NCBI GenBank assembly: GCA_002269645.1
Contig: NIVC01001816.1
Coordinates: forward strand, 1-64,000
Origin: Macrostomum lignano
Taxonomy: Eukaryota
Reading direction: 5' to 3'
DNA: 64,000 bases
Shown here in pieces: positions 44,367 to 64,000 of this stretch. The first letter of the stretch is position 1. The number at the start of each line of letters is the position of its first letter. The notes under the pieces were generated by a model. It saw only the letters and a program-made list of their open reading frames with translations, searched no databases and was not told the origin of the DNA. Position numbers and translations under genes: made by a program.

Positions 44367-44397
<31 letters not shown>

Positions 44398-44490: not shown

Positions 44491-44545
<55 letters not shown>

Positions 44546-44546
44546 G

Positions 44547-44609
<63 letters not shown>

Positions 44610-44610
44610 G

Positions 44611-44641
<31 letters not shown>

Positions 44642-46680
44642 GTCCTGACGAAACGCAACAGCCGGCAACCCGAACCCATCCCAGGACCTGTGCTACATCG
44701 GGTTCAGCATAGCGAAGCTGTCAACCAGAGACGCACCGGACGCGTACGAACAGCTGGAGCTGGCATCCAGTTACTTCTGCTTGGCCGTGGAACGGGTGAC
44801 CCACAGCGAGCTGGCCGGTTCCGTGTGGGCCACCTTCATGGCGGCGGCGGAGCACCTGAGCATGGAAGACACCGCCAAAGACGCTATGCGGTCGGCGTTG
44901 GAGAGGGCGCCAGCAGATGTCAACGTTGTCCGCTGTGTACTGGCCTATGTGTCACACTACGTGCCGGCTATGGTGGGTGCTCTTGATATTGTTCCTAGTT
45001 TCCTAATCCTTTCTAGAAATATCACGTTTTCCTTGACATCCTGTGTTTTTCAGTTTATCCTATTTTTAGCTAATATCCCAGTTTCATAAATATCCCCTTT
45101 TTTATAAATATCCCTTTTTTTCACAGATATCCCATATTTTATAAATGTCACTTATTTCATAAATAACCCGTATCTCATAAATATCACATATTTCATAAAT
45201 ACCACATATTTCATAAATACCCCATATTTCATAAGTATCATTTATTTCATAAATATACCATATTTAATAAATATCCCATATTTCATAAACATCCCATTTC
45301 CCACTACAGCAAAATAATCACTTGCAATTATTCCACAGGTGCCGCCAGGATTAACTATGCTTCGCGATCTGTTGCCCCCGGGAACCGCTGACTCAGATCC
45401 TCAGATTGGCCTAACCGAAGTAACCGAAGCTCTACTCTCCGGTGACTCAAACGTTGCCATAGCAACCGCTCTGCGGCTGACTCGCTGCTCAGCTGAGCAA
45501 TCGCAAGCGGCTGGTTGGATAGCGGCTCTGCGCACTTTGGCGACGATGAAATTCGAGCACGGCTCGAAGCCAGTTTCGAGTTTGAAATCGTTGGGCTCTG
45601 TTGCACTTTTCGATCGATGCCTGCGCCAGCTGGACCGCATCAAAGTGCCAGCGGTTTCGGCAGGTTACTTGGGTCGCCAGTACCTGGACGAAGTGGCCGC
45701 TTGTCTGTCTGTCTCGCCTTTGCTAAAAGCTCTCTGTACTGGAAGTAACTTGAGGTCCGGAGTTCGAGTCTCGCTGAAGCATCTATGCGCGAGTTGGCCA
45801 AGCCATCCTGCTCTGTCGGACATTGTTGATGCTGTGCGGGTTTAAGAAACATAAAAAAACATTTCTTTACTTTGTTTTACTAATTTTTCCGGTCTAGCTA
45901 CCTTGTGAGGTAAAATTATTCGATAAATAGTAAATAAACCCGTTCATTCGGTTTTTACGAGTGTTATTTGTTAGCTGTAATAGTTTGGATTTATCATTAG
46001 TAAATTTTCTTAAATCTATAATTGCTCTTTATTATTAACATAGTAAACTAGTTATTTGTCTAATTTATAAGACTGTCTAATAGCCGGCCCTGTCAGCTCA
46101 CTGCCTACAAACCCCTATTCTCATTATCAATACGTATTATTCACCTCGTTGCTTCCTTCATCACCTATGTAACTACCCCATCACCTCACTGTCTACCCCA
46201 TCACCTCACTGTCTACCCCATCACCTCACTGTCTACCCCATCACCTCACTATCTACCCCATCACCTCAATATCTACCCCATCACCTCAATATCTACTCCA
46301 TCGCTTCACTGTCCACCCCATCACCTCACTATCTACCCCATCACCTCAATATCTACCCCATCGCTTCACTGTCCGCCCCATCACTTCACTGTCTACCCCA
46401 TCACCTCATCATCTACCCCATCACCTCATCATCTACCCCATCACCTCACTATCTACCCCATCACCTCACTGTCTACCCCATCACCTCACTGTCTACCCCA
46501 TCACCTCACTGTCTACCCCATCGCTTTACTGTCTACCCCATCACTTCACTGTCTACCCCATCACCTCAATATCTACCCCATCACTTCACTGTCTACCCCA
46601 TCACCTCAATATCTACCCCATCACTTCACTGTCTACCCCATCACCTTACTGTCTACCCCATCACTTCACTGTCTACCCCA
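40590..46680 (+). repeat. Tandem duplicate of ~34375-40574 containing TTC37 exons 8-12
   Basis: ORFs repeat at offsets 6113 and 6093-6094; coding exons appear identical; differences seen mainly in repeat tracts and a homopolymer. Confidence 0.95.
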
Positions 46681-46900: not shown

Positions 46901-48765
<1,865 letters not shown>

Positions 48766-49229
48766 ATTATATTTAGAGGTTTGGCCATAGACAATTAATT
48801 AATAATAAAATCCAAGATAGTTCACGAAACAAAAAAACTCGTTGAAGCTACTATTTTGCTAGTAGTGTGAACGAGTTTAATTATTTGGTTTTATAATCAA
48901 TCAAAGAAAAAAGTTCATAGTTGAAACGCTATTAAGAATTTTTTGCTATAATCTATTAATTTTGAATTCGATTTTAATACACTCGCAACAGCGTTCCCTT
49001 GACTCTAATCGATGTGCTTAATGATTGTATCGATATTCCTTTGAAGCATTGTATTTTTGTCATTTTCAACCGCTAGAACCCATTACTGCGGCTCAAGTGT
49101 AAAAATGGCTTGTAGTACTTGAATAGAAAGCTGCTATATTTATTGTTCTAAAAACGCTTAAATTGTGTTTTAGTTTTTTCATCAAATCTTGTTTGCATAC
49201 AATATAGTCCTAAAAACTATTTCATACCT

Positions 49230-49855
49230 GACTCACCACTCTGACCCACCAATCGCTGACCCACTGACTCAGCCCGCTGAACAACCAATCGCTGACTCAC
49301 CCCGTTGACCCACTAATCATTGACCCACCAATCCCTGAACACCACACTGACCCACCAATCGCTGACTCACCGCGCTGACCCAACAATCGCTGACCCACCA
49401 ATTGCTGACTCATCACACTGACCCACCAATCAGTGACTCACAAATCACTGACCCACCAATCACTGACTCACCAATCACTGACTCACCAATCACTGACTCA
49501 CCAATCACTGACTCACCACACTGACCCACCAATCACTGACTCACCACACTGACCCACCAATCACTGACTCACCAATCACTGACTCACCACACTGACCCAC
49601 CAATCACTGACTCACAAATCACTAACCCACCATTCGCTGACCCACCAATCACTGACTCACCACACTGACCCACCAATAACTGACTTACCAATAACTGACT
49701 CACCAATCACTGACTCACCAATCACTGACTCACCAATCACTGACTCACCAATCACTGACTCACCAATCACTGACTCACCAATCGCTGACCCACCAATCAC
49801 TGACTCACCAATCGCTGACCCACCAATCACTGACTCACCACACTGACCCACTAAC
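49230..49855. repeat. ~15-bp minisatellite (ccaatcactgactca)
   Basis: Visible array upstream of PLCXD-A. Confidence 0.92.
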
Positions 49856-49857
49856 CA

Positions 49858-51751
49858 TTGATCGGTCAATCGTCTATTTTCCTGTCTCGACGATCCTCAT
49901 CAAGAGCATCAGAAGCTGCCGGCGCCACCGCCGCTGCAGCTCCAGACGGTGCCGTGGTCCCAAATTTCGACCCCGCCAACTGGATGTCCCAGCTTCCACC
50001 AGCTGTTGCTGCGATGCCGCTGTGCCAGCTGGCTCTGCCTGGCTCTCACGACAGCTTCGCTTCGAGCTTCGATCTCAACCGGTCTTTGGGCCCGGACTCA
50101 CCCGAGCTGCTGCTGGCTTTGTTGAATAATCGGCTGGGCAGACGGCTGGTACTGCGCTGGTCCAAGACTCAATCGTTAAGTCTGCTACGTCAGCTGGAGT
50201 CGGGGATTCGATACCTGGACCTTCGGGTCGCGCTGATCAAGGGCCAGTTCTATTTGCTGCACTCTTTGGTTGCCATTAGCGTGCCGGATGCGCTGGATGA
50301 GGTGAGCGACTGGGCCATAGACAGTCACTCTCCGATTCACTAAGTCACTATCTGATTCACTCAGTCACTCCCTGACTCACTCAGTCACTCCCTGATTCAC
50401 TGAGTCACTCTCCAATTCACTCAGTCACTCCCTGATTCACTGAGTCACTCCCTGATTCACTGAGTCACTCTCCGATTCACTAAGTCACTCTCTGACTCAC
50501 CCAGTCACTCTCTGATTCACTCAGTCACTCCCTGATTCACTGAGTCACTCCCTGATTCACTGAGTCACTCTCCGATTCACTAAGTCACTCTCTGACTCAC
50601 CCAGTCACTCTCTGATTCACTCAGTCACTCGCTGATTCACTCAGTCACTCGCTGATTCACTCAGTCACTCGCTGATTCACTCAGTCACTCGCTGATTCAC
50701 TCAGTCACTCTCTGATTTACTCAGTCACTCTCTGATTTACTCAGTCACTCCCTGATTCACTCAGTCACTCTCCAATTCACTGAGTCACTCCCTGATTCAC
50801 TGAGTCACTCCCTGATTCACTGAGTCACTCTCCGATTCACTAAGTCACTCTCTGACTCACTCAGTCACTCTCTGATTCACTCAGTCACTCCCTGATTCAC
50901 TCAGTCACTCCCTGATTTACTGAGTCACTCTCCGATTCACTCAGTCACTCTCTGACTCACTCAGTCACTCTCTGATTCACTCAGTCACTCGCTGATTCAC
51001 TCAGTCACTCGCTGATTCACTCAGTCACTCGCTGATTCACTCAGTCACTCTTTGATTTACTCAGTCACTCCCTGATTCACTCAGTCACTCTCTGATTTAC
51101 TTAGTCACTCCCTCATTCACTCGCCGCATTCAGACCAGTCCGCCATAATTCCAATTTCACTAATTCATTTCGTTCACCCAGGTGGCCACCTTCGTGGCGG
51201 CGCACCCCGCCGAGGCGGTGCTGCTGGACTTCAACCATTTCTACAGCATGGACAGCCTGTCGGACATGCGGGCCTTCCAGCAGCTGCTCATCTCCAAGCT
51301 GGGCCGCCGCCTCAGCCCGCCAGCCTCCGAGGTGCCGAGCCTGGCCCAGCTGCGCTCCCAGAACCAGTCGGTGCTGGCATTTCAGGCCTCCCAGTTCGAC
51401 CGCAGCGAACTGCCAGCCCTGTGGGAGAGCGGCACCTGGATGCCCAGTCCGTGGCCCAACACCACCGACATTGGCGAGATGGTGGCGGCTCTGGACCGCA
51501 CCTACTCCATGCCGCATGGCAACCACTTTCTGGTGCTGCAGGCTGTGCTCACGCCAGATGCCGGCTTCATCCTGCGGCATCCCCTGAGCAGCTTGCGCAA
51601 TTCCCTCAGCCTGCCCGGCAACCGGGCCTTCGTGAGCTGGCTGCGACAGGGCAAGAAGGCGCTCGGCTGCCAAGGCGTGAACGTGGCCATCACCGACTTT
51701 GTGGAGGACAGCGACTTCGTGCAGGCGGTTGCCGGGCTCAACTTCCAGTGA
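49858..51751 (+). CDS. PLCXD: PI-PLC X-domain protein, paralog A; exons ~49858/49984-50301 and 51182-51751, start uncertain
   Basis: NWMSQLP...LALPGSHDS, QLESGIRYLDLRV, VLLDFNHFY, VAITDFVE. Confidence 0.88.
50330..51120. repeat. 20-bp minisatellite (tgattcactcagtcactc..) filling the PLCXD-A intron
   Basis: Visible. Confidence 0.95.
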
Positions 51752-51829
51752 TGACGCGGAGAGTCTGGATTTGAGAGGGAGTTACTGGGATGGTCCTGAT
51801 TTTTCGGATTTGGGATATCTGGTTTGTGG

Positions 51830-52230
51830 TGGCACCTGGGATCGTGGGATCAGTGATTTGCAACACCTGGGATTTTGGGCATGTGATTTGCAACACCTGG
51901 GATTTGGGGATCTGTGATTTGCAGCACCTTGGATTTTGAGATCTGTGAGCTGCAATACCTGGGATTTTAAGATCTGTGAGCTGCAACACCTGGGATTTTG
52001 AGATCTGTGAGCTGCAATACCTGGAATTTTGGGATCTGTGATTTGCAATACCTGGGATTTTGGGATCTGTGATTTGCAATACCTGGGATTTTGGGATCTG
52101 TGATTTGCAACACCTGGGATTTTGATCTGTGATTTGCAGCACGTGGGATTTTAAGATCTGTGAGTTGCAGCACCTGCGATTTGAGGATCTGAGATTGCAA
52201 CGCCAGGGATTTTGAGTTCTGTGATTTGCA
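51830..52230. repeat. ~29-bp repeat (gggatctgtgatttgcaacacctgggatttt), also at 56690-56970
   Basis: Visible in the 3' flank of both PLCXD copies. Confidence 0.9.
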
Positions 52231-52699
52231 GGCGTTTTTTATCGCTAAATAAAACTCACAATATAAACGCACGCCTTTTTAATCATATATCAAGTGACCA
52301 TTCAAATACGATTCTCCACTTATTAGAGCTAATATTTGAAGTAATTTATTACTTGATTTGATTTTAAGCTGTGTCCCATTGTTCTAATCACGTTTTGTGG
52401 TTTAGATTTTTGTTACCGTGAGTAAAACCAAGTTTAATCGATTTGAACAAGTGTTATTGCACATATAGACCCTGACTGTAACATTCTTTCCGATGTCTGT
52501 GCTAAACCCGTCTTTCGTCTGTGATGTTTGAAATCTGATTAAAATACAATAAATAATTCTGTGCCTTTGATTATTAATCAATAATTATGACAAGTATTTT
52601 TTTTCTAAAATACAAACTAATTTGTGTCAATTTTATATCTTTAATTCTGCAGAATCTAAGTAACATTATAGTTCTAATGCTAGTAATTTTGTGCCTGAG

Positions 52700-53700
52700 A
52701 ATGGGTTCAGTAATTGTGTCTTGGAGGGTTCAGCAATTGTGTCTCAGAGGGTTCAGCAAATGTGTCTTGGAGGGTTCAGCAGTTGTGTCTCAGAGGGTTC
52801 AGCAATTGTGTCTTGGAGGGTTCAGCAGTTGTGTCTTGGAGGGTTCAGCAATTGTGTCTTGGAGGGTTCAGCAGTTGTTTCTCGGAGGGTTCAGCAGTTG
52901 TGTCTTGGAGGGTTCAGCAATTGTGTCTCAGAGGGTTCAGCAAATGTGTCTTGGAGGGTTCAGCAATTGTGTCTCAGAGGGTTCAGCAAATGTGTCTTGG
53001 AGGGTTCAGCAATTGTGTCTCAGAGGGTTCAGCAATTGTGTCTTGGAGGGTTCAGCAATTGTGTCTCAGAGGGTTCAGCAAATGTGTCTTGGAGGGTTCA
53101 GCAGTTGTGTCTCAGAGGGTTCAGCAATTGTGTCTTGGAGGGTTCAGCAATTGTGTCTCAGAGGGTTCAGCAAATGTGTCTTGGAGGGTTCAGCAATTGT
53201 GTCTTGGAGGGTTCAGCAGTTGTGTCTTGGAGGGTTCAGCAGTTGTGTCTTGGAGGGTTCAGCAGTTGTTTCTCGGAGGGTTCAGCAGTTGTGTCTTGGA
53301 GGGTTCAGCAATTGTGTCTTGGAGGGTTCAGCAGTTGTGTCTTGGAGGGTTCAGCAATTGTGTCTTGGAGGGTTCAGCAATTGTGTCTTGAATGGTTCAG
53401 CAATTGTGTCTTGAATGGTTCAGCAGTTGTGTCTTGGAGGGTTCAGCAATTGTGTCTCAGAGGGTTCAGCAAATGTGTCTTGGAGGGTTCAGCAATTGTG
53501 TCTTGGAGGGTTCAGCAGTTGTGTCTTGGAGGGTTCAGCTTGTGTGTCTTGGAGGGTTCAGCAATTGTGTCTTGGATGGTTCAGCAAATGTGTCTTGAAT
53601 GGTTCAGCAGTTGTGTCTTGGAGGGTTCAGCAATTGTGTCTTGGATGGTTCAGCAAATGTGTCTTGAATGGTTCAGCAGTTGTGTCTTGGAGGGTTCACC
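52700..53700. repeat. 23-bp minisatellite (agggttcagcaattgtgtcttgg)
   Basis: Visible. Confidence 0.96.
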
Positions 53701-53769
53701 TGTGGTATCCACTACACCGACCGCAACGCAATCCCATGCATGTCTTTGCAGCAGCCGTCAGCTGACACC

Positions 53770-56600
53770 ATGACCAGCGGTTGCTCAGCAAAGTCATTCA
53801 ACGGCACCGACTGGATGTCACAGCTGCCAGAGTCTGCGGCTCAGCTGCCCCTGTGCCAGCTGGCTCTGCCGGGCTCCCACGACAGCTGTACCGAGTTCTT
53901 GGACCTGCACCGGTGCATCGGGCCCGACTCGCCGGAGGCGCCCCGACGGTATGGGGAGAATTCTTCCAGTCAGTGCTAATCCATCACCATAATTGGGATT
54001 AACCTGTTTAGACTACTCACTCTAAATCCATCTTGAATACTGACTCTTAATCCATCCTGAATACTGACTCTTAATCCATCTTGAATACTGACTCTTAATC
54101 CATCCTGAATACTGACTCTTAATCCATCCTGAATACTGACTCTTAATCCATCCTGAATACTGACTCTTAATCCATCCTGAATACTGAATCTTAATCCATC
54201 TTGAATACTGACTCTTAATCCATCTTGAATACTGACTCTTAATCCATCCTGAATACTGACTCTTAATCCATCTTGAATACTGACTCTTAATCCATCCTGA
54301 ATACTGACTCTTAATCCATCCTGAATACTGACTCTTAATCCATCCTGAATACTGACTCTTAATCCATCCTGAATACTGACTCTTAATCCATCTTGAATAC
54401 TGACTCTTAATCCATCCTGAATACTGACTCTTAATCCATCTTGAATACTGACTCTTAATCCATCTTGAATACTGACTCTTAATCCATCTTGAATACTGAC
54501 TCTTAATCCATCTTGAATACTGACTCTTAATCCATCCTGAATACTGACTCTTAATCCATCCTGAATACTGACTCTTAATCCATCCTGAATACTGACTCTT
54601 AATCCATCCTGAATACTGACTCTTAATCCATCTTGAATACTGACTCTTAATCCATCTTGAATACTGACTCTTAATCCATCTTGAATACTGACTCTTAATC
54701 CATCTTGAATACTGACTCTTAATCCATCCTGAATACTGACTCTTAATCCATCTTGAATACTGACTCTTAATCCATCCTGAATACTGACTCTTAATCCATC
54801 TTTAATACTGACTCTTAATCCATCTTGAATACTGACTCTTAATCCATCTTTAATACTGACTCTTAATCCATCCTGAATACTGACTCTTAATCCATCTTGA
54901 ATACTGACTCTTAATCCATCTTGAATACTGACTCTTAATCAGTGGTGTGATTCAGGCGCGAATTCGCGCCAGGCGCGAAAATGGCGCGAATGCGCGAATC
55001 CTGGGGGTCTGGCGCGAAATTTTGTGGAACCATGGGCGCGAAAATTGCATTCTTATTTTCTGCTTTTTACACTTATTCTCTTGTCAGACAGTATGAAATA
55101 CAAGAATGTCATAGCTTAGGAGATTAATCTCGAGAATTTCGAGATTCGTGGAGAATTTCGTGGTCGCAAAGAAGCAAAGTGACAATGAAGATGTGGCTGC
55201 TACGTCTGCAAGGGCGGCAGAGATCAGATGTGTGTGTTGTCAGGATTGCACTGAAGAATCGCAGCTTCGAGTCAGAAGAGGACCTTGCCGAGGATCTGAT
55301 GGCCATTTGCCCAGATTCAAAGATTCCACCCAACATCGCCAACAAGAAGTTCAGGCGGGACACGGCTGGGACTTGAGAGACATGCTAATTGGTAGCCAGA
55401 CGCATCCTCAAAAGTGTCATCAATTGACTTATTTGGCTGTCAGTAGAATATCATTGGCATGGCGCGAAAATTTTCAGTCGGCGCGAAATTTGGCAAACTT
55501 TCCAATCACACCACTGCTCTTAATCCATCTTTAATACTGACTCTTAATCCATCCTGAATACTGACTCTTAATCCATCTTGAATACTGACTCTTAATCCAT
55601 CTTTAATACTGACTCCATAATGCTCCTCTCTAGCTAATCCACTCATACAATATTAATCCGCCGTAGTAACTGCTCCGGCTCTTGCAGCTACTTCAACAAC
55701 ACGGCAGGCCGCCTCTACCTGAGGAGGTGGTGGCGCACCCAGTCGCTGACCATCCGCCAGCAGCTGGACCTCGGCATTCGCTATTTGGACCTGCGAGTCG
55801 CCAAATTTGACGACGGATTCCGGCTGCTGCACTCTCTGATCTCCATCAGCCTGGAGGAGGTGCTGGATCAGGTTGGACACTCTTACCTGCGCTCTGTACC
55901 AGCGGCCCAGGCTCGATTCCAAGTGCAGTTACATTAATTTGGGACTAAATTGGAATCTCGGCTTGGCTCTGCTCGTGCAATTAACGGCCTTGAGATTGGC
56001 ACGTTTGACACGGCCAAACCCAACCCTCAGATTGCCGACTTCGTAGCGGCGCACCCCGCCGAGGCGGTGCTGCTGGACTTCAACCATTTCTACAGCATGG
56101 ACAGCCTGTCGGACATGCGGGCCTTCCAGCAGCTGCTCATCTCCAAGCTGGGCCGCCGCCTCAGCCCGCCAGCCTCCGAGGTGCCGAGCCTGGCCCAGCT
56201 GCGCTCCCAGAACCAGTCGGTGCTGGCATTTCAGGCCTCCCAGTTCGACCGCAGCGAACTGCCAGCCCTGTGGGAGAGCGGCACCTGGATGCCCAGTCCG
56301 TGGCCCAACACCACCGACATTGGCGAGATGGTGGCGGCTCTGGACCGCACCTACTCCATGCCGCATGGCAACCACTTTCTGGTGCTGCAGGCTGTGCTCA
56401 CGCCAGATGCCGGCTTCATCCTGCGGCATCCCCTGAGCAGCTTGCGCAATTCCCTCAGCCTGCCCGGCAACCGGGCCTTCGTGAGCTGGCTGCGACAGGG
56501 CAAGAAGGCGCTCGGCTGCCAAGGCGTGAACGTGGCCATCACCGACTTTGTGGAGGACAGCGACTTCGTGCAGGCGGTTGCCGGGCTCAACTTCCAGTGA
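53770..56600 (+). CDS. PLCXD: PI-PLC X-domain protein, paralog B; exons 53770-53948, 55688-55871, 56031-56600
   Basis: TDWMSQLP...PGSHDS, PRR|YFNN...QLDLGIRYLDLRV...LDQ|IADFVAAHP; phases consistent. Confidence 0.87.
54030..55620. repeat. 20-bp minisatellite (aatccatcctgaatactgactctt-like unit) in PLCXD-B intron 1, interrupted by a MITE
   Basis: Visible on both sides of the insertion. Confidence 0.93.
54940..55516. mobile_element. hAT-type non-autonomous element (577 bp)
   Basis: 13-bp TIR cagtggtgtgatt / aatcacaccactg, 8-bp TSD ctcttaat at 54932 and 55517, subterminal ggcgcgaa repeats at both ends. Confidence 0.9.
55885..55995 (+). mobile_element. 5' fragment of SINE family 2 in PLCXD-B intron 2
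   Basis: cccaggctcgattccaagtgcagttacattaatttgggactaaattggaatctcggcttggc matches the reverse complement of 62830-62910. Confidence 0.85.
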
Positions 56601-57656
56601 TGACGCGGAGAGTCTGGATTTGAGAGGGAGTTACTGGGATGGTCCTGATTTTTCGGATTTGGGATATCTGGTTTGTGGTGGCACCTGGGATCGTGGGATC
56701 AGTGATTTGCAACACCTGGGATTTTGGGCATGTGATTTGCAACACCTGGGATTTTGATCTGTGATTTGCAGCACGTGGGATTTTGGGATCTGTGATTTGC
56801 AATACCTGGGATTTTGGGATCTGTGATTTGCAACACCTGAGATTTTGGGATCTGTGATTTGCAACACCTGGGATTTGCGGATCTGTGATTTGCAGCACCT
56901 GGGATTTTGGGATCTGTGATTTGCAGCACCTGGGATTTTGGGATCTGTGATTTGCAACACCTGGGATTTGATATCTTTGAATTACTGACAACTTCTTTGT
57001 TAAAGACTGTGAAAGATCGAATGGGTTGTTTTTTATTTGTGCAGTCTCGGTGCTGCTCAAAAAGCACACCGTATTTTTCTCAATTCCACTTTTAGTTTAT
57101 CTTTAATTTCTGGATTTTACATTTTTTATTTTTTAGCTTGTAAAAGGATACACAAACAAAGACCATGATGAAGTTTTCTTTTTTTAGTTTTAAATTTTAA
57201 CTTTAATGCGACAATAGAATAACAGCAATGGATTTCTTGACTGAATTGCCACCGCTTGATAAACACACGCGTTTGTTGCCATTGCTAACGATTTATTAAT
57301 TTCATTAATTAATAAACAAAGGACTTAAATAAGAAAACGAATAACAATAAGTAAGCATGCGGCAAACGGGCTTATAAGAATGGATATACATTGACAGAAT
57401 GTACTCAAGCTGCTAAACTATAATTAGTTGAATGACAAAACAGCAATTTTGTTTTCTATAACCGTACATGTTATTTAAAACGCAACTTTTACTATTTACA
57501 GTACCGAATTATACTACCGAATAAAATATATGTGAGTAGTATGTAAAAAATGCGAATTTTCTCATCTTAAACTGACCAAAATAAAAGTAGAATTAATATT
57601 AATATAAAAAATAAGCACAGTTAAATATTGATCAGTCGGACACCAGTGCCGCAATG

Positions 57657-60600
57657 TTACCGCACCCGTTTCTCAGCCTTGGGCGACTTCGGATACAGCG
57701 GCGACCACTGAAGGCAGGCGGCATCGATGAGCTGCGGCTTCCTCGGCAGGATGCGCAGCAGGTGCTCTTGAACGGTGCGCTGCGGCAGGCACAGGTCGTA
57801 GCTGCCGCGCCAGTATTGCAGCAGGCCGAGCCCGTGCAGAGTGTCTTGCACGTCATCGCGAGAGATCGCCGTGGCCGAGCAGATGTCGCGGACTGTGCAG
57901 GACGGATGCGACTGGATGTAGTCTAGGATGGCGTACTCCCAGTAGCTCCTGTGGGGGTTGGGATTGAATCGGTGATCTAGCGAAGCACAGGGCAGTGGAT
58001 ACGAGGGGCGACACAGGAGAGACAGAGGCAGGCACGGCAGGGACACAGAGGCAGACACAACAGGGACACAGAGGCAGACAGCAGACACAGCTTGGACACA
58101 GAGACAGACACAGCAGAGGCAAAGATGCAGACGCAGCAGGGACACAGAGGCAGACAGCAGACACAGCTTGGACACAGAGACAGACACAGCAGAGGCACAG
58201 ATGCAGACACAGCAGGGACACAGAGACAAACACAACAGGGACAGAGACAGACAGCAGACACAGCACGGACACAGAGACAGACACAACAGGGACAGAGACA
58301 GACAACAGACACAGCTTGGACACAGAGACAGACACAGCAGAGGCACAGATGCAGACACAGCAGGGACACAGACAGACACAGCAGAGACACAGACAGACAC
58401 AGCGGGGACAGAGGCAGACACAGCAGGGACACAGACAGACACAGCGGGGACAGAGGCAGACACAGCAGGGACACAGACAGACACAGCAGAGACACAGACA
58501 GACACAGCGGGGACAGAGGCAGACAGCAGAGACACAGACAGACACAGCAGAGACACAGACAGACACAGCGGGGACAGAGGCAGATACAGCAGGGACACAG
58601 ACAGACACAGCAGAGACACAGACAGACACAGCGGGGACAGAGACAGACAGCAGAGACACAGACAGACACAGCGGGGACAGAGGCAGACACAGCAGGGACA
58701 CAGACAGACACAGCAGAGACACAGACAGACACAGCGGGGACAGAGGCAGACACATAGACAGACACAACAGGGACAGAGACAGACAGCAGACACAGCACGG
58801 ACACAGAGACAGACAGCAGACACAGCTTGGACACAGAGAGACACAGCAGAGGCACAGATGCAGACACAGCAGGGACACAGAGACAGACAGCAGACACAGC
58901 TTGGACACATAGACAGACACAACAGGGACACAGGCAGACCCAGCAGGGACACAGAAGCTACCTACCTGTAGGTGACTTTCCCCAAATCGCTAAGCGGTTT
59001 CTCGGGGCCGCCAACCAGCCCCTCAACCCTGGCCAACTCGTAGCTCAGCGAAATGAGCAGCTTGCCGTAGCCTTTGCGCTGATGCGGCGGCAGGGTGAGG
59101 ATGCAGGCCAGGTTGTTGCTATCCGGCGAGTCCTTCTCCTTGCTAAAATAGCCCACAATGTGACAGCCGTGCCGGTCCACTTCGCACAGAATGTAGAACA
59201 GGAAGCCGGACACGTCAAAGTACAGAGTTTTGTGATCCAGGAACAGCTTGGCCAGCAGGCAGAGGCACTGGCAGTAGAGTTTGCGCTGCTTGCCATCCAC
59301 TTCAAATACTGACAGATTGCCTTTGCGGTAGATTTCTCTGCCGGGGGGCTGGCGGTATTCGCACTGGGACAGGTGATATTTGTGCGACTTCTCCAGGCCC
59401 ATGTACTTCAGGCAGTACTCGCAGATCCACAGCTTTGTCTGCTTGCCGTATTCGTCAGGATAGGGGCTGAAGTACCAGGTGGTGATCTCGTATTTGCCAA
59501 TCTGGATGAGGTCGATGTACTTCACCTGGGATGGGGGCGGTGCGGGTGGGCAGGTGGTCTGCTGAACAACTTGTCAATAAATTATTATATCAATCAATCA
59601 ATTGATTAGTAAAAAATCTGCGAATTTGTATATCGATTAATCAATCTATCAACCAATACCAACCAGCTTGCAGATTGCATGTTTTATTAATTGATTGGTT
59701 GATTCTTTAACTGCTTGTTAGATTTTTTGATTAAATCAATCAACCATTAAATCGATCAATCAATAAAACATCAATCAATCTACCAACCAACCAACTAATC
59801 AATTAATAAATCAACCAACCATTAAATCAATCAATTGATCTATCTATCAATCAGTCAACCAATCAATCAATCTACTAACCAAGCAACTAATCAATTAATA
59901 AATCAACCAACCATTAAATCAATCAATTGATCTATCTATCAATCAATCAACCAATCAATCAATCTACTAACCAAGCAACTAATCAATTAATAAATCAACC
60001 AACCATTAAATCAATCAATTGATCTATCTATCAATCAATCGATCAACTTATGAGCCAATCAATCAACTAATCAATGAACCAATCAATCAATAAAACATCA
60101 ATCAATCTACCAACCAACCAATAAACTAATCAATCAATCACTCAATTCCCCTAGCTAGCCACCTTAGTCAGCTCCTGGTGCTCCCTCTCCAACGCGGCGG
60201 TGGCAGCGTCCATCTCTTCAACCGACTGCGGCACGTGGTGAATCTCGTGAAATTTCCGCTTCTGATGCCGAGTCAGGCGTGTCTTGTCCCCGCCGCTGGA
60301 GGCCAGCGGGTCCAGCCCGGCGGACTCGAGAGTCCCAGCTGGGTTGCTCACATCGATCCGGTCAATGCTGACCCATTCATCAAGGCGCCTGTCAAAGTCC
60401 AGATAGTGAATGAAATACTCCTGCGAGTTGGCCCGATCGGCGGTCTCCCGTTTGTGCACGATCTCGGCCGGGTACCACTGCCCGTCCGCGACTCGCAGCA
60501 CTGGGAACCGGCCACCGATCTCCAGGGCCGGCTGCGGACCTGCAGCCGCTGCTGCTGCGCTTGATGCGCCCGAGGATGATGAAGCGATGGCTGAGGACAT
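57657..60600 (-). CDS. KAT8: MYST histone acetyltransferase KAT8/MOF; exons 60600-60163, 59525-58966, 57948-57657
   Basis: Tudor-knot (YFIHY...RRLDEWV), [14 protein letters not shown]...EREHQELTK|VKYID, CEYCLKY zinc finger, [16 protein letters not shown]...YR|SYW. Confidence 0.95.
57990..58960. repeat. acag-rich compound minisatellite in KAT8 intron 2
   Basis: Visible. Confidence 0.95.
59570..60140. repeat. (atca)n-derived repeat in KAT8 intron 1
   Basis: Visible. Confidence 0.88.
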
Positions 60601-60709
60601 TTGCTGGTTTGGTTTCGTTTAGGCTGGCTGGCTTTTGCCGGGGGTTGGAAGGCTGGAATGGCGACACGAGTGGAGCTGCTTGATTGGGCTGAATCTGCCA
60701 TTGTCTGTC

Positions 60710-61270
60710 CCAGTGTCTTGCGTCCGTCCTAGTGTCTTGGTGTCTGTCCTAGTGTCTGTCTGTCCTAGTGTCTTGGTGTCTGTCTTGGTGTCTGTCCTAG
60801 TGTCTGTCTGTCCTAGTGTCTTGGTGTCTGTCTTGGTGTCTGTCCTAGTGTCTGTCTGTCCTAGTGTCTGTCTGTCCTAGTGTCTTGGTGTCTGTCTTGG
60901 TGTCTGTCCTAGTGTCTGTCTGTCCTAGTGTCTTGGTGTCTGTCTTGGTGTCTGTCCTAGTGTCTGTCTGTCCTAGTGTCTTGGTGTCTGTCTTGGTGTC
61001 TGTCCTAGTGTCTGTCTGTCCTAGTGTCTTGGTGTCTGTCTTGGTGTCTGTCCTAGTGTCTGTCTGTCCTAGTGTCTTGGTGTCTGTCTTGGTGTCTGTC
61101 CTAGTGTCTTGGTGTCTGTCTTGGTGTCTGTCCTAGTGTCTTGGTGTCTGTCTTGGTGTCTGTCCTAGTGTCTTGGTGTCTGTCTTGGTGTCTGTCCTAG
61201 TGTCTTGGTGTCTGTCTTGGTGTCTGTCCTAGTGTCATGGTGTCTGTCTTGGTGTCTGTCCTAGCCTCTT
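60710..61270. repeat. 12/24-bp minisatellite (gtgtctgtcttg/gtgtctgtccta) upstream of KAT8
   Basis: Visible. Confidence 0.95.
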
Positions 61271-61510
61271 GGTGTCTGTCCTAATTCCTAAGTGTCCCGT
61301 GTCCTTAGCACTCGTATATTGTTGTCTACATGCCTTGATAGCTAATGTCCCTATCCCTGGTTTTTGTCTGTCTCTTAAAGTATAAATGAAAATGAAAATA
61401 ACAAAATTAACTAAGTACTGCTTAACAAGAAGCAAGTTCGACATGCATAATAATATATTGAGAAAGTTGAAAACACTGGACTTAATTCATCCATATTACT
61501 AAAAAGCTAC

Positions 61511-63423
61511 CTAAATGCAGTTCACAGCTACTCTGCCAGACGGTTCATTATCAAACAGCAGTGAATCCCTGGCCTGTTTAAGCTGAACTAAAATCTCGTC
61601 ACTATGAATAGTGTTGCAGTTCAAGGCCAGCCGGATCACGCGTCTGCTATCAGTCTCTAAGAAATAGCGGCGCCTGCTATGGCGATACAGCGGATCGTAA
61701 TGATCAGTTAGCAATAGATGGACCAGCTTAGGAATGTCGCCTGCAGCGGCTGCGGCAAGCCAGTTTGCCTGTGTGGATTTTGAATGGTGCCTGCCGAGTA
61801 GATTGAGCCTCTCAATCAGCAGTTCAGTACGTTCTACAAGCGAGCCGTACTGTTCAATCAGATGCTTGACTCGATCGTCTGCACTTTCTGCTTCTAAAAG
61901 TATTCTGGGCGACCGGGCCAGGGTGGCTACTAGCGACTGCGGCAGAGAGCGATACCCAATGCGAGCCGACTCGCATTCCAGCCACACCGGCTTGTCCGCG
62001 TCCAGCTGGCTGAGAGTTCGAAAAAGCGACGATTCGAACGATTTCTGACTTGGCTGATCGGGTCTGTTGGGATCTGAGCCGAGCAGGGAGCCTCGGTGAT
62101 TTGCTAGGGACTCCAGATCGACTACCTGGTAATTGTAAAAAAGGAAGTCAAGTTTTAAATGACCCTTTTCGGGCAGGTTATTTACAGGCAATTCTAGTCT
62201 AGTTCTACTAAATCTAGTCAGTTCAAACGGCCCTTTTAAGGCAGGTTAATTACAGACACTTTTAGTCTAGTCTAGTTCTACTAAATCTAGTCGGTTAAAA
62301 CGGCCCTTTTAAGGCAGGTTACTTACAGTCACTTCTAGTCTAGTCTAGTTCTACTAAATCTAGTCAGTTAAAACGGCCCTTTTAAGGCAGGTTACCTACA
62401 GACACTTTTAGTCTAGTTCTACTAAATCTAGTCAGTTAAAACGGCCCTTTTAAGGCAGGTTACCTACAGACACTTTTAGTCTAGTTCTACTAAATCTAGT
62501 CAGTTAAAACGGCCCTTTTAAGGCAGGTTAATTACAGACACTTCTAGTTCTACTGAATCTAGTCAGTTAAAACGGCCCTTTTAAGGCAGGATACTTTTTT
62601 TTATTAGAGGCAGGGGGGTTGTGTGCACCCTGGCGCACTTTAAGCGACATGGGCACGCAACCGGCGAGAGGCATTACTGCCCATTCCGCCGACTCCCCTG
62701 AGCAGGCACACAAGCGCGCGGATACGTACGCAGGCACACACTCACACAGGAGTGTACAGCGGCCCTAACTTTATATTATCGTTAGGCATGTACACTTCAC
62801 TGCGCCTTGGGGGGTTGGCTCTCAAGGCCGTTAATTGCACGAGCAGAGCCAAGCCGAGATTCCAATTTAGCCCCAAATTAATGTGACTGCACTTGGAATC
62901 GAGCCTGGGTCGCTGGCACACCAGAGCAGCTGCGCTACCGCTGGGCTACGCCCCCCCTAGGCAGGATACTTACAGACACTTCTAGTTCTACTACATCTAG
63001 TTCAGTTAAAACGGCCCTTTTCAGGCAGGTAATTACAGATTACTAATGTTATGCTCATAAGCAAAAACTTACACCTAAAATGGCTAAAATTAAAACGGCT
63101 CTTTTCGGGCAGCGCTTTAAAAACTAGACGAGATCTACTGTTAACTCTATAAAACAGTATAATTGCATACCTGCTCTCCTTGTCTAGCCAATCGTTCAAG
63201 CAGGTAAGTCTTGCCTGAACCTGTCAGCCCAGCTAAAACCACTGCGCGTTTAAGTCGTCCAACAGGCGGCTCAACACCGGCAAGGTCATTCAGTGACTTC
63301 ACAACGACGCGCCTGTAGGCCCGGTAGCCGCCGGCAAGAACTGTTGGCTGGTAGCCAATCTGGGAAAGCACGATCGCTAGAGAGTGGGAGCGCTGGCCGC
63401 CGCGCCAGCAGTAGATTAAAGGC
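61511..63423 (-). CDS. selU: tRNA 2-selenouridine synthase (SelU/MnmH/YbbB) homolog, 3' partial; exons 63423-63171 and 62125-61511
   Basis: Rhodanese PLIYCWRGGQRS, LAGGYRAYR, P-loop GLTGSGKT, DLESLANHRGS, QPSQKSFES, ECESARIG, HYDPLY. GT-AG phase-0 intron 63170-62126. Confidence 0.9.
62160..63130. repeat. ~60-bp minisatellite filling the selU intron
   Basis: tctagttctactaaatctagtcagttaaaacggcccttttaaggcagg units on both sides of the SINE. Confidence 0.9.
62597..62958 (-). mobile_element. Full-length tRNA-derived SINE (family 2) with 13-bp TSD
   Basis: Head ggggggcgtagcccagcggtag (A box) and ggctcgattcc (B box), A-tail ctaataaaaaaaa, TSD aggcaggatactt at 62584 and 62959. Confidence 0.9.
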
Positions 63424-63559
63424 CTGGCGAGGATTTCAATAATTATGGAGAATTATGAAATTTGCAAGACACCTTGCGACGCATTTTAGGGCACTAAGAT
63501 ATTGGGATGCGAAGATATAATTCTAATAATTTAAGGATTTTTTGCAATGGGAAAAGGGG

Positions 63560-64000
63560 ATTTTGTAGACACATCTACTCCATCTAGTCAGTTTCTAACC
63601 AGGATTCTGGGAAAGGGGATTTTGTAGGATTTCAGGCAAAGGGGATATTGTAGGATTCCAGGCAAAGGGGACTTTGTAGGATTCTAAGTAAAGGGGATTT
63701 TGTAGGATTCTAGGTAAAAGGGGATTTTGTGGGATTCTAAGAAATGGGGATTTTGTAGGATTCTACAAAAAATGGGGATTTTGTAGGATCCTAGAAAAAT
63801 TGGGATTTGTGGGATTCTAGGAAATGGGGATTTTTGTAGAATTCTAAGAAATGGGGATTTTGTAGGATTCTAAGAAAAAGGATTTTGTAGGATTCTAGGA
63901 AATAAGGATTTTGTAGGATTCTAGGAAATAAGGATTTTGTAGGATTCTAGGAAATAAGGATTTTGTAGGATTCTAGGAAATAAGGATTTTGTAGGATTCT
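63560..64000. repeat. ~21-bp minisatellite (aaggggattttgtaggattct) in the upstream selU intron
   Basis: Visible to the window end. Confidence 0.92.

What the first reader, a model, noticed from the sequence alone, without database searches (positions are those of the whole stretch)
61511..63423. Spliced animal gene for tRNA 2-selenouridine synthase (SelU/MnmH)
Seen: rhodanese CWRGG active-site Cys, Walker A GLTGSGKT and downstream SelU motifs are intact. The gene is split by GT-AG introns holding host minisatellites and a host SINE, and sits beside KAT8, so it is genome-integrated rather than bacterial contamination. Established: SelU geranylates s2U34 and swaps S for Se in tRNA-Lys/Glu/Gln in prokaryotes using selenophosphate; this is not an established animal pathway to my knowledge. 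Inference: old horizontal or organellar acquisition, or patchy retention, giving an animal Se- or geranyl-modified cytosolic or mitochondrial tRNA.
Basis: partly seen in the sequence, partly recalled or inferred. Interest (0 to 1): 0.85.

Follow-up and report, generated by a model that had tools for sequence, protein, structure and literature searches.

The report
Flatworm nuclear gene for tRNA selenouridine synthase
The flatworm Macrostomum lignano carries an intact, spliced, selection-maintained nuclear copy of the bacterial-type enzyme that puts selenium into the wobble base of tRNAs. The selenium literature treats this as a prokaryote-only trait, although I found unpublished look-alike genes in mollusc and amphioxus genomes too.

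Summary
The window is Macrostomum lignano contig NIVC01001816.1. On the minus strand, 61511-63423 holds the last two of three coding exons of a SelU/MnmH orthologue. The full-length protein scores 382 bits against a curated cut-off of 266. The experimentally defined residues G67, C97 and K155 are all conserved.

The gene is a host gene, not contamination:
- It has GT-AG introns filled with minisatellites and one recent SINE-like insertion.
- Yip1-SelU-KAT8 order is kept in three homeologous loci.
- Its codon usage matches the host's.
- Annotated models are RNA-seq-derived.
- It is under purifying selection.

Exon 1 lies 277 bases beyond the window. It adds about 55 residues that resemble a mitochondrial presequence. 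The protein has no internal Met. It can start at a genomic ATG or at the AUG donated by the flatworm spliced leader.

The gene is not unique among animals. "tRNA 2-selenouridine synthase-like" genes sit on chromosomes of many molluscs and of amphioxus, and form a clade with 98% bootstrap support. The flatworm gene falls outside that clade, so a separate acquisition is the more likely origin.

Reviews state that selenocysteine is the only selenium trait in eukaryotes. Enzyme activity, cellular compartment and donor lineage remain untested. Interest 0.7.

The parts
61511..62125 (-). Coding exon 3 of the SelU/MnmH gene (residues V222-I425 plus the TAG stop at 61511-61513). It encodes the rest of the P-loop domain (Pfam AAA_SelU), with the conserved motifs DLE..A.HRGS, QPSQK.FE, E.ES..IG and HYDP.Y.
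   Evidence: Translation; exon mapping against P0001/P0123; motifs invariant in alignments A1 and A2.
62126..63170 (-). Intron 2, 1045 bp, phase 0, GT...AG, lying between Q221 and V222 in GEQ|VVDLE.
   Evidence: Junction contexts GGAGAGCAG|GTATGC and TTACCAG|GTAGTC. The same position is used in all three homeologs, with lengths of 1045, 1034 and 596 bp.
62163..62596 (.). 68-bp minisatellite inside intron 2 (6.3 copies, 90% matches).
   Evidence: Tandem Repeats Finder.
62595..62958 (-). SINE-like retroposon inserted into the minisatellite, in the same orientation as the gene. It has a tRNA-like head with A and B boxes (62895-62948) and an A-rich tail (62595-62604). It is flanked by the 11-bp target-site duplication GTATCCTGCCT (62584-62594 and 62959-62969). 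It is present only in this homeolog.
   Evidence: Sequence read on the minus strand; A/B-box pattern found once, 0 of 100 shuffles; absent from intron 2 of L002 and L003, with 101-bp fragments at 94-96% identity elsewhere in the window and loci. Not called as a tRNA by ARAGORN or Rfam.
63171..63423 (-). Coding exon 2 (last base of the R137 codon through Q221). It encodes the rhodanese active-site loop YCWRGGQRS (Cys142 at 63408-63410, equivalent to E. coli C97) and the Walker A motif GLTGSGKT (63207-63230; K208, equivalent to E. coli K155).
   Evidence: Translation; alignment with E. coli SelU; roles of C97 and K155 from PMC4830565.
63424..64000 (-). The 3' part of intron 1 (853 bp in all, phase 2, donor GTGAGT outside the window). 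It contains a 26-bp minisatellite at 63601-64000. Exon 1 (M1 to the first two bases of R137) lies at record positions 64277-64686, just beyond the window.
   Evidence: L001 is the same contig extended past the window; exon 1 and its junctions; minisatellite.
57657..60600 (-). Downstream neighbour on the same strand: KAT8 (MYST-family histone acetyltransferase), with minisatellite-filled introns. It anchors the SelU gene in animal chromatin.
   Evidence: Called gene with Tudor-knot, zf-MYST and MOZ_SAS domains; best PDB matches are human KAT8.

Best explanation
This is a functional nuclear gene of the flatworm Macrostomum lignano (locus Mlig025034, three homeologous copies). It encodes an orthologue of bacterial tRNA 2-selenouridine synthase (SelU/MnmH/YbbB).

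Shown here:
- The gene has three coding exons. The last two lie in the window.
- It sits between the host genes Yip1 and KAT8.
- The annotated gene models, which carry these exon junctions, are RNA-seq-derived.
- The coding sequence is under purifying selection.
- It keeps the two-domain SelU architecture and every experimentally defined catalytic residue.

Inferred mechanism, taken from the bacterial enzyme:
1. The P-loop domain binds geranyl pyrophosphate and S-geranylates the 2-thiouridine at wobble position 34 of tRNA-Glu, tRNA-Gln and possibly tRNA-Lys.
2. The rhodanese cysteine (Cys142) then uses selenophosphate from the animal's SPS2 to replace the geranylthio group with selenium, giving a 2-selenouridine.

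Inferred compartment. A eukaryote-specific N-terminal extension of about 55 residues is basic, free of acidic residues, and has a predicted amphipathic helix. This suggests import into mitochondria. Mitochondria are where bacterial-type xm5s2U34 tRNAs, the native SelU substrate made by the MnmA/MnmE/MnmG homologues MTU1, GTPBP3 and MTO1, are found.

Inferred start codon. The protein has no internal methionine. Translation starts either at a genomic ATG 15 bases upstream of the earliest annotated transcript-model end, or at the AUG supplied by the trans-spliced leader. The leader would join at an in-frame TTGCAG acceptor.

Inferred origin. The gene was acquired from a non-animal donor, which I could not resolve. 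This happened before the polyploidisation of M. lignano, and independently of the SelU-like gene shared by molluscs and amphioxus.
For: Identity:
- Full-length protein scores 382.2 bits on NF008752 (cut-off 266) and 307.3 on TIGR03167 (cut-off 219.75).
- Pfam finds Rhodanese plus AAA_SelU.
- E. coli G67, C97 and K155 correspond to Mlig G113, C142 and K208, which are invariant in the alignments. Their roles are described in PMC4830565.
- The AlphaFold model is confident: pLDDT 86.3, pTM 0.82, core above 90.
- Its rhodanese half matches the SelU-like N-terminal domain 3g5j. Its P-loop half resembles NMP kinases and the tRNA prenyltransferase MiaA.

Host gene:
- The window is 100% identical to M. 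lignano contig NIVC01001816.1.
- Yip1-SelU-KAT8 order holds at three loci.
- GT-AG introns sit at identical positions with different repeat loads. The SINE-like insertion is in one copy only.
- RSCU correlation with pooled host ORFs is r = 0.80. GC3 is 0.547 against 0.535.
- Other window genes are of animal type: ASC channel, ZNHIT3, Y-family polymerase, SDR.

Expression and selection:
- GenBank models BOX15_Mlig025034g1-3 come from a genome-guided RNA-seq assembly (PMC5730564).
- All three ORFs are intact, with dN/dS of 0.16-0.37.
- There are 18 synonymous against 16 non-synonymous changes where 75% non-synonymous is expected; binomial p = 4.4e-4.

N-terminus:
- The first 54 residues have no D or E, 6 R/K and 11 S/T. 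The peak helical hydrophobic moment is 0.53 at residues 14-31.
- AlphaFold predicts a helix there, followed by a disordered linker.
- The mollusc and amphioxus proteins have the same kind of extension. Bacterial ones do not.

Start codon:
- An in-frame ATG and a TTGCAG|TTC acceptor are both conserved in the three loci.
- The M. lignano SL ends in ATG and its acceptor motif is [T/C]TNCAG (PMC8629364).
- Use of the SL AUG as initiator in flatworms is cited in PMC12582326.

Selenophosphate supply: flatworms have a single SPS2 (PMC4561486).

Independent origin:
- Molluscs, Branchiostoma and P0127 form a clade with 98% bootstrap support. Mlig joins it in 0 of 300 replicates.
- Mlig shares 0 of 5 clade signature residues.
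- In a leave-one-out HMM test, true clade members gain 60 to 145 bits on the animal profile. Mlig loses 22.6 bits.
- No intron position is shared, and gene neighbourhoods differ.
Against: - No biochemical evidence exists: no activity assay and no detection of se2U or ges2U in flatworm tRNA.
- The mitochondrial assignment rests on composition and a predicted helix. No dedicated targeting predictor was available. 12% of shuffles of the N-terminus reach the same hydrophobic moment.
- It is unknown whether selenophosphate or geranyl pyrophosphate reaches the flatworm mitochondrial matrix.
- SPS2, MTU1, GTPBP3 and MTO1 were not looked for in M. lignano itself.
- The position of the gene among bacterial and eukaryotic sequences is unresolved. 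Bootstrap support for any sister group is at most 17%. Only neighbour-joining could be run.
- Flatworms evolve fast and turn over introns, so an extremely diverged vertical orthologue is not strictly excluded.
- The best bacterial BLASTP hit beats the best animal hit only modestly: 282 against 264 bits, an alien index of about 14.
- Use of the spliced-leader acceptor is not shown. Annotated 5' ends are ragged.
Confidence: 0.6

Rival explanations
1. Vertical inheritance with patchy retention. The flatworm gene would be the same ancient bilaterian (or older eukaryotic) SelU gene that survives in molluscs and amphioxus. It would simply have diverged too far in the fast-evolving flatworm lineage to cluster with them.
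For: - SelU-like genes exist in both a deuterostome (Branchiostoma) and spiralians (molluscs), and form one clade. An ancestral bilaterian gene is therefore plausible, and flatworms are spiralians.
- All animal proteins, Mlig included, carry a similar presequence-like extension.
- Mlig is a long branch with no supported sister group.
Against: - Mlig is never recovered with the animal clade: 0 of 300 bootstraps.
- It has none of the 5 clade signature residues.
- It scores 22.6 bits worse on the animal-clade profile than on bacterial profiles of the same size. Every true member scores 60 to 145 bits better.
- Mean distance from Mlig to the animals (1.13) equals that from Mlig to bacteria (1.14). 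Branchiostoma to molluscs is 0.82.
- No intron position or neighbouring gene is shared.
Confidence: 0.25
2. The enzyme acts in the cytosol on mcm5s2U34 of cytoplasmic tRNA-Lys, tRNA-Glu and tRNA-Gln rather than in mitochondria. The N-terminal extension would be a linker or a regulatory region.
For: - Selenophosphate synthetase and geranyl-PP synthesis are cytosolic in animals (established knowledge).
- Bacterial MnmH still geranylates s2U that lacks the (c)mnm5 side chain, at about 40% of the normal level (PMC4830565). The C5 substituent is therefore not strictly required.
- A review lists mnm5se2U under Eukarya as well (PMC7694415).
Against: - The N-terminal 54 residues have no acidic residue and hold an amphipathic helix followed by a disordered linker. 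This is the classic mitochondrial presequence pattern.
- The independently derived mollusc and amphioxus proteins have the same kind of extension.
- Mitochondria contain the bacterial-type substrate and its biosynthetic enzymes (established knowledge).
Confidence: 0.25
3. The gene is retained for a function other than selenation. Candidates are S-geranylation of tRNA alone, or a sulfur or persulfide relay.
For: - Geranylation needs only the P-loop and not the catalytic Cys (PMC4830565).
- Supply of selenophosphate to the relevant compartment is unproven.
- The protein is only about 31% identical to E. coli SelU and 43-49% identical to its best hits.
Against: - The selenation-specific Cys and its whole loop, YCWRGGQRS, are invariant in Mlig and in all 91 aligned homologues.
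- The protein passes equivalog-level cut-offs.
- Flatworms have SPS2 (PMC4561486).
Confidence: 0.15
4. Artefact: bacterial contamination of the assembly, or a dead pseudogene from a recent transfer.
For: The nearest sequences by BLASTP are bacterial-length proteins from metagenomes.
Against: - It lies on a 234-kb contig between animal genes and has two spliceosomal introns.
- There are three syntenic homeologs with intact ORFs under purifying selection.
- Codon usage matches the host's.
- The gene models are transcript-derived.
- A host retroposon and host minisatellites sit inside its introns.
Confidence: 0.02

Closest known systems
Bacterial tRNA 2-selenouridine(34) synthase SelU / MnmH / YbbB (E. 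coli b0503; NCBIfam NF008752, TIGR03167)
   Same: - N-terminal rhodanese domain with the SelU-specific insertion, followed by a P-loop domain.
- Catalytic Cys in C-W-R-G-G-Q-R-S, Walker A G-x-T-G-S-G-K-T, and the G67 equivalent.
- Full-length score well above the equivalog cut-offs.
   Different: - 31% identity to E. coli SelU and 43-49% to its best bacterial hits.
- Nuclear gene of an animal with two spliceosomal introns.
- About 45 extra N-terminal residues resembling a presequence, and about 30 extra C-terminal residues.
- No internal Met.
'tRNA 2-selenouridine synthase-like' genes of molluscs (Littorina, Haliotis, Dreissena, Mercenaria, Saccostrea and others) and amphioxus (Branchiostoma floridae, B. 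lanceolatum), named by automated annotation in NCBI records
   Same: - Animal chromosomal, intron-containing SelU homologues.
- All catalytic residues kept.
- A basic N-terminal extension of 40-60 residues with few acidic residues.
   Different: - They form their own clade with 98% bootstrap support, which excludes the flatworm gene.
- The flatworm protein is 40-43% identical to them.
- It lacks their signature residues and fits their profile worse than bacterial profiles.
- Intron positions and neighbouring genes differ.
SelU homologues of microbial eukaryotes (cryptophyte Baffinella frigidus; unnamed TARA/ENA/JGI contigs with eukaryote-like gene density)
   Same: Eukaryotic SelU proteins with long N-terminal extensions. 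Some look like signal-plus-transit peptides and some like presequences.
   Different: - They fall in several separate small clades.
- None is a supported sister of the flatworm gene.
- Their profile scores Mlig about the same as bacterial profiles do: 387.5 against 387.4 bits.
Archaeal split SelU of Methanococcales (TIGR04568 and TIGR04569)
   Same: The same two modules.
   Different: In Methanococcales the modules are encoded as two separate genes. The flatworm protein scores only 52.5 and 30.2 bits against cut-offs of 200 and 180.
tRNA isopentenyltransferase MiaA (PDB 3exa, 3d3q) and P-loop NMP kinases
   Same: The modelled P-loop domain resembles these folds. MiaA likewise uses a P-loop to bind a prenyl pyrophosphate and transfers the prenyl group to a tRNA anticodon-loop base. 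This is a 'works like' analogy for the geranylation step.
   Different: No significant sequence similarity; Foldseek E-values are only 2e-3 to 1e-2. MiaA has no rhodanese domain and modifies A37, not U34.

Membership tests
SelU/MnmH tRNA 2-selenouridine synthase | Score above the curated equivalog cut-off of the family models | tested here: met
   NF008752 at 382.2 bits (cut-off 266) and TIGR03167 at 307.3 (cut-off 219.75) for the full-length protein. The in-window fragment alone scores 282.8 and 239.6.
SelU/MnmH tRNA 2-selenouridine synthase | Two-domain architecture: an N-terminal rhodanese domain with the SelU-specific insertion of about 36 residues (containing the G67 equivalent), followed by a P-loop domain (AAA_SelU) | tested here: met
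   Pfam PF00581 plus PF26341. G113 aligns with E. coli G67 and is invariant. The model is confident, with helices 87-121 forming the insertion. The domain definition comes from PMC4830565.
SelU/MnmH tRNA 2-selenouridine synthase | Catalytic cysteine of the rhodanese loop (E. coli C97, C-x-x-G), required for selenation | tested here: met
   C142 in YCWRGGQRS is invariant in alignments A1 and A2. The requirement is shown in PMC4830565.
SelU/MnmH tRNA 2-selenouridine synthase | Intact Walker A motif (E. coli K155), required for geranylation | tested here: met
   GLTGSGKT with K208; the G, G and K columns are invariant. The requirement is shown in PMC4830565.
SelU/MnmH tRNA 2-selenouridine synthase | Co-occurrence with selenophosphate synthetase (SelD/SPS2) in the same genome | not testable with these tools
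There is only literature support that flatworms carry a single SPS2 (PMC4561486).
SelU/MnmH tRNA 2-selenouridine synthase | Catalytic activity: conversion of s2U34 via ges2U34 to se2U34 in tRNA-Lys, tRNA-Glu and tRNA-Gln | not testable with these tools
   This needs an enzyme assay, complementation of ΔselU, or LC-MS of tRNA nucleosides.
Metazoan SelU-like clade (molluscs + cephalochordates) | Groups with the clade in a phylogeny | tested here: not met
   The clade has 98% bootstrap support without Mlig. Animals plus Mlig are monophyletic in 0 of 300 replicates. Neighbour-joining only.
Metazoan SelU-like clade (molluscs + cephalochordates) | Fits the clade profile better than bacterial profiles, and carries the clade's signature residues | tested here: not met
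   Mlig loses 22.6 bits, whereas six leave-one-out members gain 60 to 145 bits. It shares 0 of 5 signature residues.
Metazoan SelU-like clade (molluscs + cephalochordates) | Shared intron positions or shared synteny | tested here: not met
   Mlig introns: R137 phase 2, and Q221|V222 phase 0. Branchiostoma introns: after residues 110, 151, 186, 214 and 246. Dreissena and Littorina share one intron before GLTGxGKT. None coincides with a Mlig intron. Neighbouring genes also differ: KxDL and an RRM protein in Branchiostoma, RNase_T in Littorina, against Yip1 and KAT8 in Mlig.
Mitochondrial matrix protein with a cleavable presequence | N-terminal extension lacking acidic residues, rich in R/K, S/T, A and L, and able to form an amphipathic helix | tested here: met
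   The first 54 residues have no D or E, 6 R/K and 11 S/T, with a peak hydrophobic moment of 0.53. AlphaFold predicts a helix and then a disordered linker. Bacterial homologues lack the extension. The shuffle control is weak, at 12%.
Mitochondrial matrix protein with a cleavable presequence | Call by a dedicated targeting predictor, or experimental localisation | not testable with these tools
   No TargetP- or MitoFates-type tool was available, and there are no localisation data.
SL trans-spliced mRNA with an SL-donated initiator AUG (flatworms) | Acceptor matching the M. lignano trans-splice motif [T/C]TNCAG at the 5' end of the ORF, in frame with the terminal ATG of the SL | tested here: met
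   TTGCAG|TTC GGT CGC at L001 9992-10000 is conserved in all three loci. The SL sequence and acceptor motif come from PMC8629364. In-frame placement has a one-in-three chance of occurring by accident.
SL trans-spliced mRNA with an SL-donated initiator AUG (flatworms) | SL-bearing reads mapping to that acceptor | not testable with these tools
The locus was not found in the supplements or papers held.
tRNA-derived SINE | Internal pol III A and B boxes, an A-rich tail, a target-site duplication, and dispersed copies | tested here: met
   A and B boxes; tail and 11-bp duplication; the insertion differs between homeologs, and 101-bp fragments occur elsewhere.
tRNA-derived SINE | The head folds or scores as a tRNA | tested here: not met
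   No ARAGORN call and no Rfam tRNA hit at E <= 1.

The most novel reading that the evidence does not exclude
Animals have a second, unrecognised selenium-utilisation trait besides selenocysteine. Under this reading, 2-selenouridine (or its geranylated precursor) sits at the wobble position of mitochondrial tRNAs. It is installed by nuclear-encoded SelU enzymes that were captured from non-animal donors at least twice: once in the ancestor of the mollusc/amphioxus gene, and once in the Macrostomum lineage. Each capture was separately fitted with a mitochondrial presequence. In the flatworm the captured ORF has no methionine of its own beyond the extreme N-terminus, and may depend on the spliced leader's AUG for translation.
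Probability: 0.35. Interest if true: 0.85.

Novelty: new member of a known kind. Interest (0 to 1): 0.7.

Why it matters
Selenium biology currently holds that eukaryotes use selenium only as selenocysteine (PMC8744743, 2021), and that selenouridine belongs to 'certain prokaryotic organisms' (PMC13188914, 2026). Old reports of selenium-containing tRNA nucleosides in eukaryotes, still reflected in the 'E' domain assignment for mnm5se2U in PMC7694415, have never had an enzyme behind them.

An intact, expressed and selected SelU gene in M. lignano makes the question directly testable, because this flatworm is a laboratory model with RNAi and transgenesis. The parallel genes in molluscs and amphioxus add further test systems.

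If the enzyme is active, several things follow:
- Selenium status would affect decoding of Glu, Gln and possibly Lys codons, probably in mitochondria.
- SPS2 would have a second client pathway in animals.
- SelU would be a clean case of a bacterial tRNA-modification enzyme domesticated by animals more than once.

If the enzyme is inactive or repurposed, the strict conservation of the selenation cysteine would itself need an explanation.

Tried and rejected
1. Bacterial contamination or pseudogene. Rejected on synteny, introns, three intact homeologs, codon usage and transcript-derived models.

2. Uniqueness to Macrostomum. Rejected: searches seeded with eukaryote-like hits uncovered annotated homologues in amphioxus, many molluscs and a cryptophyte.

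3. Orthology with the mollusc/amphioxus clade. Tested four ways and not met.

4. Finding the donor lineage. This led nowhere.
   - Neighbour-joining trees on 130, 68 and 93 sequences place Mlig as a long, unstable branch. The best sister frequency is 17%.
   - The weak pull towards an alphaproteobacterial group has 1% support.
   - Partial hits with higher percent identity (P0161, P0273 and others) simply cover the better-conserved N-terminal half.
   - No maximum-likelihood program was available.

5. An exact-sequence look-up of the UniProt model P0001 found no contig. The NCBI cluster members did.

6. ARAGORN and Rfam on the SINE-like head gave no tRNA call. The only Rfam hit is a chance match in the minisatellite, at 20 bits against a gathering score of 175.

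7. PDB sequence and fold searches found no full-length SelU structure, only the rhodanese half, 3g5j.

8. Literature.
   - One search was badly designed and uninformative.
   - 'selenouridine synthase-like' and 'Mlig025034' return no paper.
   - The supplements held for two M. lignano papers do not list the locus.
   - HGT papers that mention Macrostomum do not concern this gene.


Full report
**What is in the window**

Reading 60500-64000 and translating the minus strand gives two open stretches.
- 63171-63423 encodes ...RPLIYCWRGGQRSHSLAIVLSQIGYQPTVLAGGYRAYRR...VVLAGLTGSGKTYLLERLARQGEQ.
- 61511-62125 encodes VVDLESLANHRGSLLGSDPNRPDQPSQKSFE... and ends in TAG.

They are joined by a 1045-bp GT...AG intron (62126-63170, phase 0), and an AG acceptor precedes 63423. 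The spliced 290-residue fragment already passes two curated NCBIfam equivalog cut-offs for tRNA 2-selenouridine(34) synthase MnmH.

**Whose genome, and the rest of the gene**

A protein search returned a 100% identical 420-residue UniProt entry from the free-living flatworm Macrostomum lignano. Its cluster holds three GenBank models, BOX15_Mlig025034g1, g2 and g3.
- The contig carrying g1 (NIVC01001816.1) is 100% identical to the window over 12.5 kb. Window coordinates equal record coordinates.
- This recovered the missing 5' part. It is a single further coding exon at record positions 64277-64686, 277 bases beyond the window.
- An 853-bp phase-2 intron with a GTGAGT donor separates that exon from exon 2.

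The complete ORF is 425 codons.
- It scores 382 bits on NF008752 (cut-off 266) and 307 bits on TIGR03167 (cut-off 219.75).
- Aligned with E. coli SelU, the three residues with genetic and biochemical support are conserved and lie in invariant columns. G67 corresponds to G113, C97 to C142, and K155 to K208.
- In E. coli or Salmonella, G67 changes boost geranylation, C97 is absolutely required for selenation, and K155 of the Walker A motif is required for geranylation (PMC4830565).
- An AlphaFold model is confident (pLDDT 86, pTM 0.82).
- Its rhodanese half matches the only solved SelU-like fragment, 3g5j. Its P-loop half resembles NMP kinases and the tRNA prenyltransferase MiaA. No full-length SelU structure is in the PDB.

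**A host gene, not contamination**

- The gene lies between Yip1 and KAT8 on a 234-kb contig.
- The rest of the window holds animal-type genes: a DEG/ENaC channel, ZNHIT3, a Y-family DNA polymerase and an SDR. It also holds many minisatellites.
- Two other contigs carry homeologous copies with the same Yip1-SelU-KAT8 order, the same two intron positions and intact 425-codon ORFs. Intron lengths differ: 853, 1884 and 1432 bp for intron 1, and 1045, 1034 and 596 bp for intron 2.
- Intron 2 of the window copy contains a 68-bp minisatellite, and inserted into that array is a 364-bp SINE-like element.
  - The element has A and B boxes, an A-rich tail and an 11-bp target-site duplication.
  - The other two copies lack it.
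  - ARAGORN and Rfam do not recognise its head as a tRNA.
- Codon usage matches pooled host ORFs: RSCU r = 0.80, and GC3 of 0.547 against 0.535.
- Among the three copies there are 18 synonymous and 16 non-synonymous changes, where neutrality predicts 75% non-synonymous (p = 4.4e-4). Pairwise dN/dS is 0.16-0.37, and no catalytic residue is touched.
- The GenBank annotation of this assembly consists of genome-guided RNA-seq transcript models (PMC5730564). The annotated exon junctions therefore rest on transcript data.
- The acquisition predates the duplication that produced the three copies.

**The N-terminus**

The family profile starts matching at residue 61. The roughly 55 residues before that are eukaryote-specific.
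- They contain no Asp or Glu, 6 Arg/Lys and 11 Ser/Thr.
- The stretch CRVTTAALATVCRVFSRY has a helical hydrophobic moment of 0.53.
- AlphaFold models that stretch as a helix followed by a disordered linker.
- This is the composition of a mitochondrial presequence. From my own knowledge, RVF|S also fits the R-3 processing motif.
- No dedicated predictor was available, and the shuffle control is weak (12%).

The protein has no methionine after position 1. Two initiators are possible.
- One is an in-frame genomic ATG, which lies 15 bases upstream of the earliest annotated transcript-model end.
- The other is the AUG at the 3' end of the M. lignano spliced leader.
- A TTGCAG|TTC site matches the published trans-splice acceptor motif [T/C]TNCAG. 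It would place the leader's ATG in frame, giving M-FGRCRV....
- Flatworm SL AUGs are known to serve as initiators (Cheng et al. 2006, cited in PMC12582326).
- All annotated models are 5'-partial and lack a Met. That fits either an SL-donated AUG or incomplete assembly.

**Is it unique among animals? No**

The exhaustive representative search gave no relative above 56% identity. Several hits had long N-terminal extensions and sat on eukaryote-like contigs. Re-seeding the search with those hits revealed three things.
- A cryptophyte homologue, from Baffinella frigidus.
- 'tRNA 2-selenouridine synthase-like' genes on chromosome-scale scaffolds of Branchiostoma.
- The same in at least 12 mollusc species, among them Littorina, Haliotis, Dreissena, Mercenaria, Saccostrea, Ruditapes and Gigantopelta.

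These genes have introns: five in Branchiostoma, one in Dreissena and two in Littorina. The two molluscs share an intron just before GLTGxGKT. They keep the catalytic residues and have basic N-termini with few acidic residues.

I found no paper describing them. [quoted passage not shown] Earlier ybbB surveys report it only in prokaryotes.

**Origin of the flatworm gene**

- In bootstrapped neighbour-joining trees, the molluscs, Branchiostoma and one unnamed sequence form a clade with 98% support. The flatworm protein joins it in 0 of 300 replicates, and no sister group exceeds 17%.
- The flatworm protein has none of the clade's five signature residues.
- In a leave-one-out profile test, genuine clade members score 60-145 bits better on the animal profile than on bacterial profiles of equal size. 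The flatworm protein scores 22.6 bits worse.
- Its introns and neighbouring genes differ from theirs.
- Its best BLASTP hits are bacterial-length proteins at 43-49% identity and up to 282 bits. Animal hits reach 40-43% identity and at most 264 bits.

I conclude that an acquisition independent of the mollusc/amphioxus gene is more likely than patchy vertical retention, roughly 0.6 against 0.25. The donor is unresolved, and only distance methods could be run.

**How it most likely works**

Shown: the gene, its structure, its conservation, transcript-derived gene models and purifying selection.

Inferred from the bacterial enzyme (PMC4830565; Sierant et al. 2018 as cited in PMC7694415):
1. The P-loop domain transfers a geranyl group from geranyl-PP to the sulfur of s2U34.
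2. Cys142 and selenophosphate then replace that group with selenium.

Inferred from the presequence-like N-terminus: the reaction takes place in mitochondria. From established knowledge, mitochondrial tRNAs carry the bacterial-type xm5s2U34 made by the MnmA, MnmE and MnmG homologues. Selenophosphate would come from the single SPS2 of flatworms (PMC4561486). How it would reach the matrix is unknown. A cytosolic role on mcm5s2U tRNAs, or a geranylation-only role, cannot be excluded.

**Verdict**

- Novelty is tempered, because the enzyme family is well known and automated annotation already names homologues in other animals.
- Against that, the trait is absent from the selenium and tRNA-modification literature I could search. 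The flatworm copy appears to be a separate capture. M. lignano is also an experimentally tractable model.
- Classification: a new member of a known kind. Interest 0.7.

Noticed in passing
L011 10001-13147 (Branchiostoma chr CM027632.1); L012 3001-4434 (Dreissena polymorpha); L013 3001-5022 (Littorina saxatilis); proteins P0334, P0433-P0449, P0458, P0477: Intron-containing 'tRNA 2-selenouridine synthase-like' genes lie on chromosomes of amphioxus and at least 12 mollusc species. They form a clade with 98% bootstrap support, keep the catalytic Cys and Walker A motif, and have presequence-like N-termini. The two molluscs examined share an intron before GLTGxGKT. I found no publication on them.
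   Followed up: partly
L005-L010; proteins P0129, P0131, P0132, P0141, P0146, P0152, P0154, P0159, P0161, P0322: SelU homologues with N-terminal extensions of 50-240 residues occur on eukaryote-like contigs. Examples are a 929-kb contig with sparse ORFs, a contig that also carries AATF-Che1, TARA Oceans scaffolds, and the cryptophyte Baffinella frigidus. They fall into several separate clades, which suggests repeated capture of SelU by microbial eukaryotes.
   Followed up: partly
L001 9968-10000 (record 64654-64686, just outside the window): The 425-residue SelU protein has no methionine apart from a possible N-terminal one. An in-frame TTGCAG trans-splice acceptor, conserved in all three homeologs, would let the terminal AUG of the spliced leader act as start codon. 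All database models are 5'-partial and lack a Met.
   Followed up: partly
window 36388-40574 and 42501-46668: A segment of more than 4.2 kb is repeated in tandem at 99.4% identity with a period of about 6.1 kb. Each copy carries the same set of minisatellites (15-bp, 8-bp CTGTCTGT and 20-bp units). This is either a recent segmental duplication or an assembly duplication.
   Followed up: partly
window 57657-58971 (KAT8 intron): A GACACA-rich minisatellite (21-bp and 76-bp periods, 58010-58933) produces long spurious ORFs of 220-430 residues in all six frames. These are repeat artefacts and not genes.
   Followed up: no
window 2542-4156, 27997-28515, 29699-31282, 32527-35663, 47894-54940, 59730-61283; L001 8990-9880: Minisatellite density is very high: dozens of arrays with 13-96-bp units, often 0.5-2 kb long, fill most introns and intergenic spacers, including all spacers around the SelU gene. 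The same 31-bp unit recurs at 51833-52230 and 56682-56969.
   Followed up: no
window 7918-10099 (-), 11172-11924 (+), 19133-23826 (+), 46901-47755 (+): Other host genes in the window are a DEG/ENaC (ASC) channel, a ZNHIT3-like zinc-finger HIT protein, a Y-family (impB/UmuC-type) DNA polymerase split over several exons, and a short-chain dehydrogenase.
   Followed up: no
window 55895-55995; L002 18789-18889 and 21735-21835: Fragments of 101 bp, 94-96% identical to the central part of the SINE-like element in SelU intron 2, occur downstream of KAT8 in all three homeologous loci. This points to a dispersed repeat family whose full-length member inserted into only one SelU copy.
   Followed up: partly
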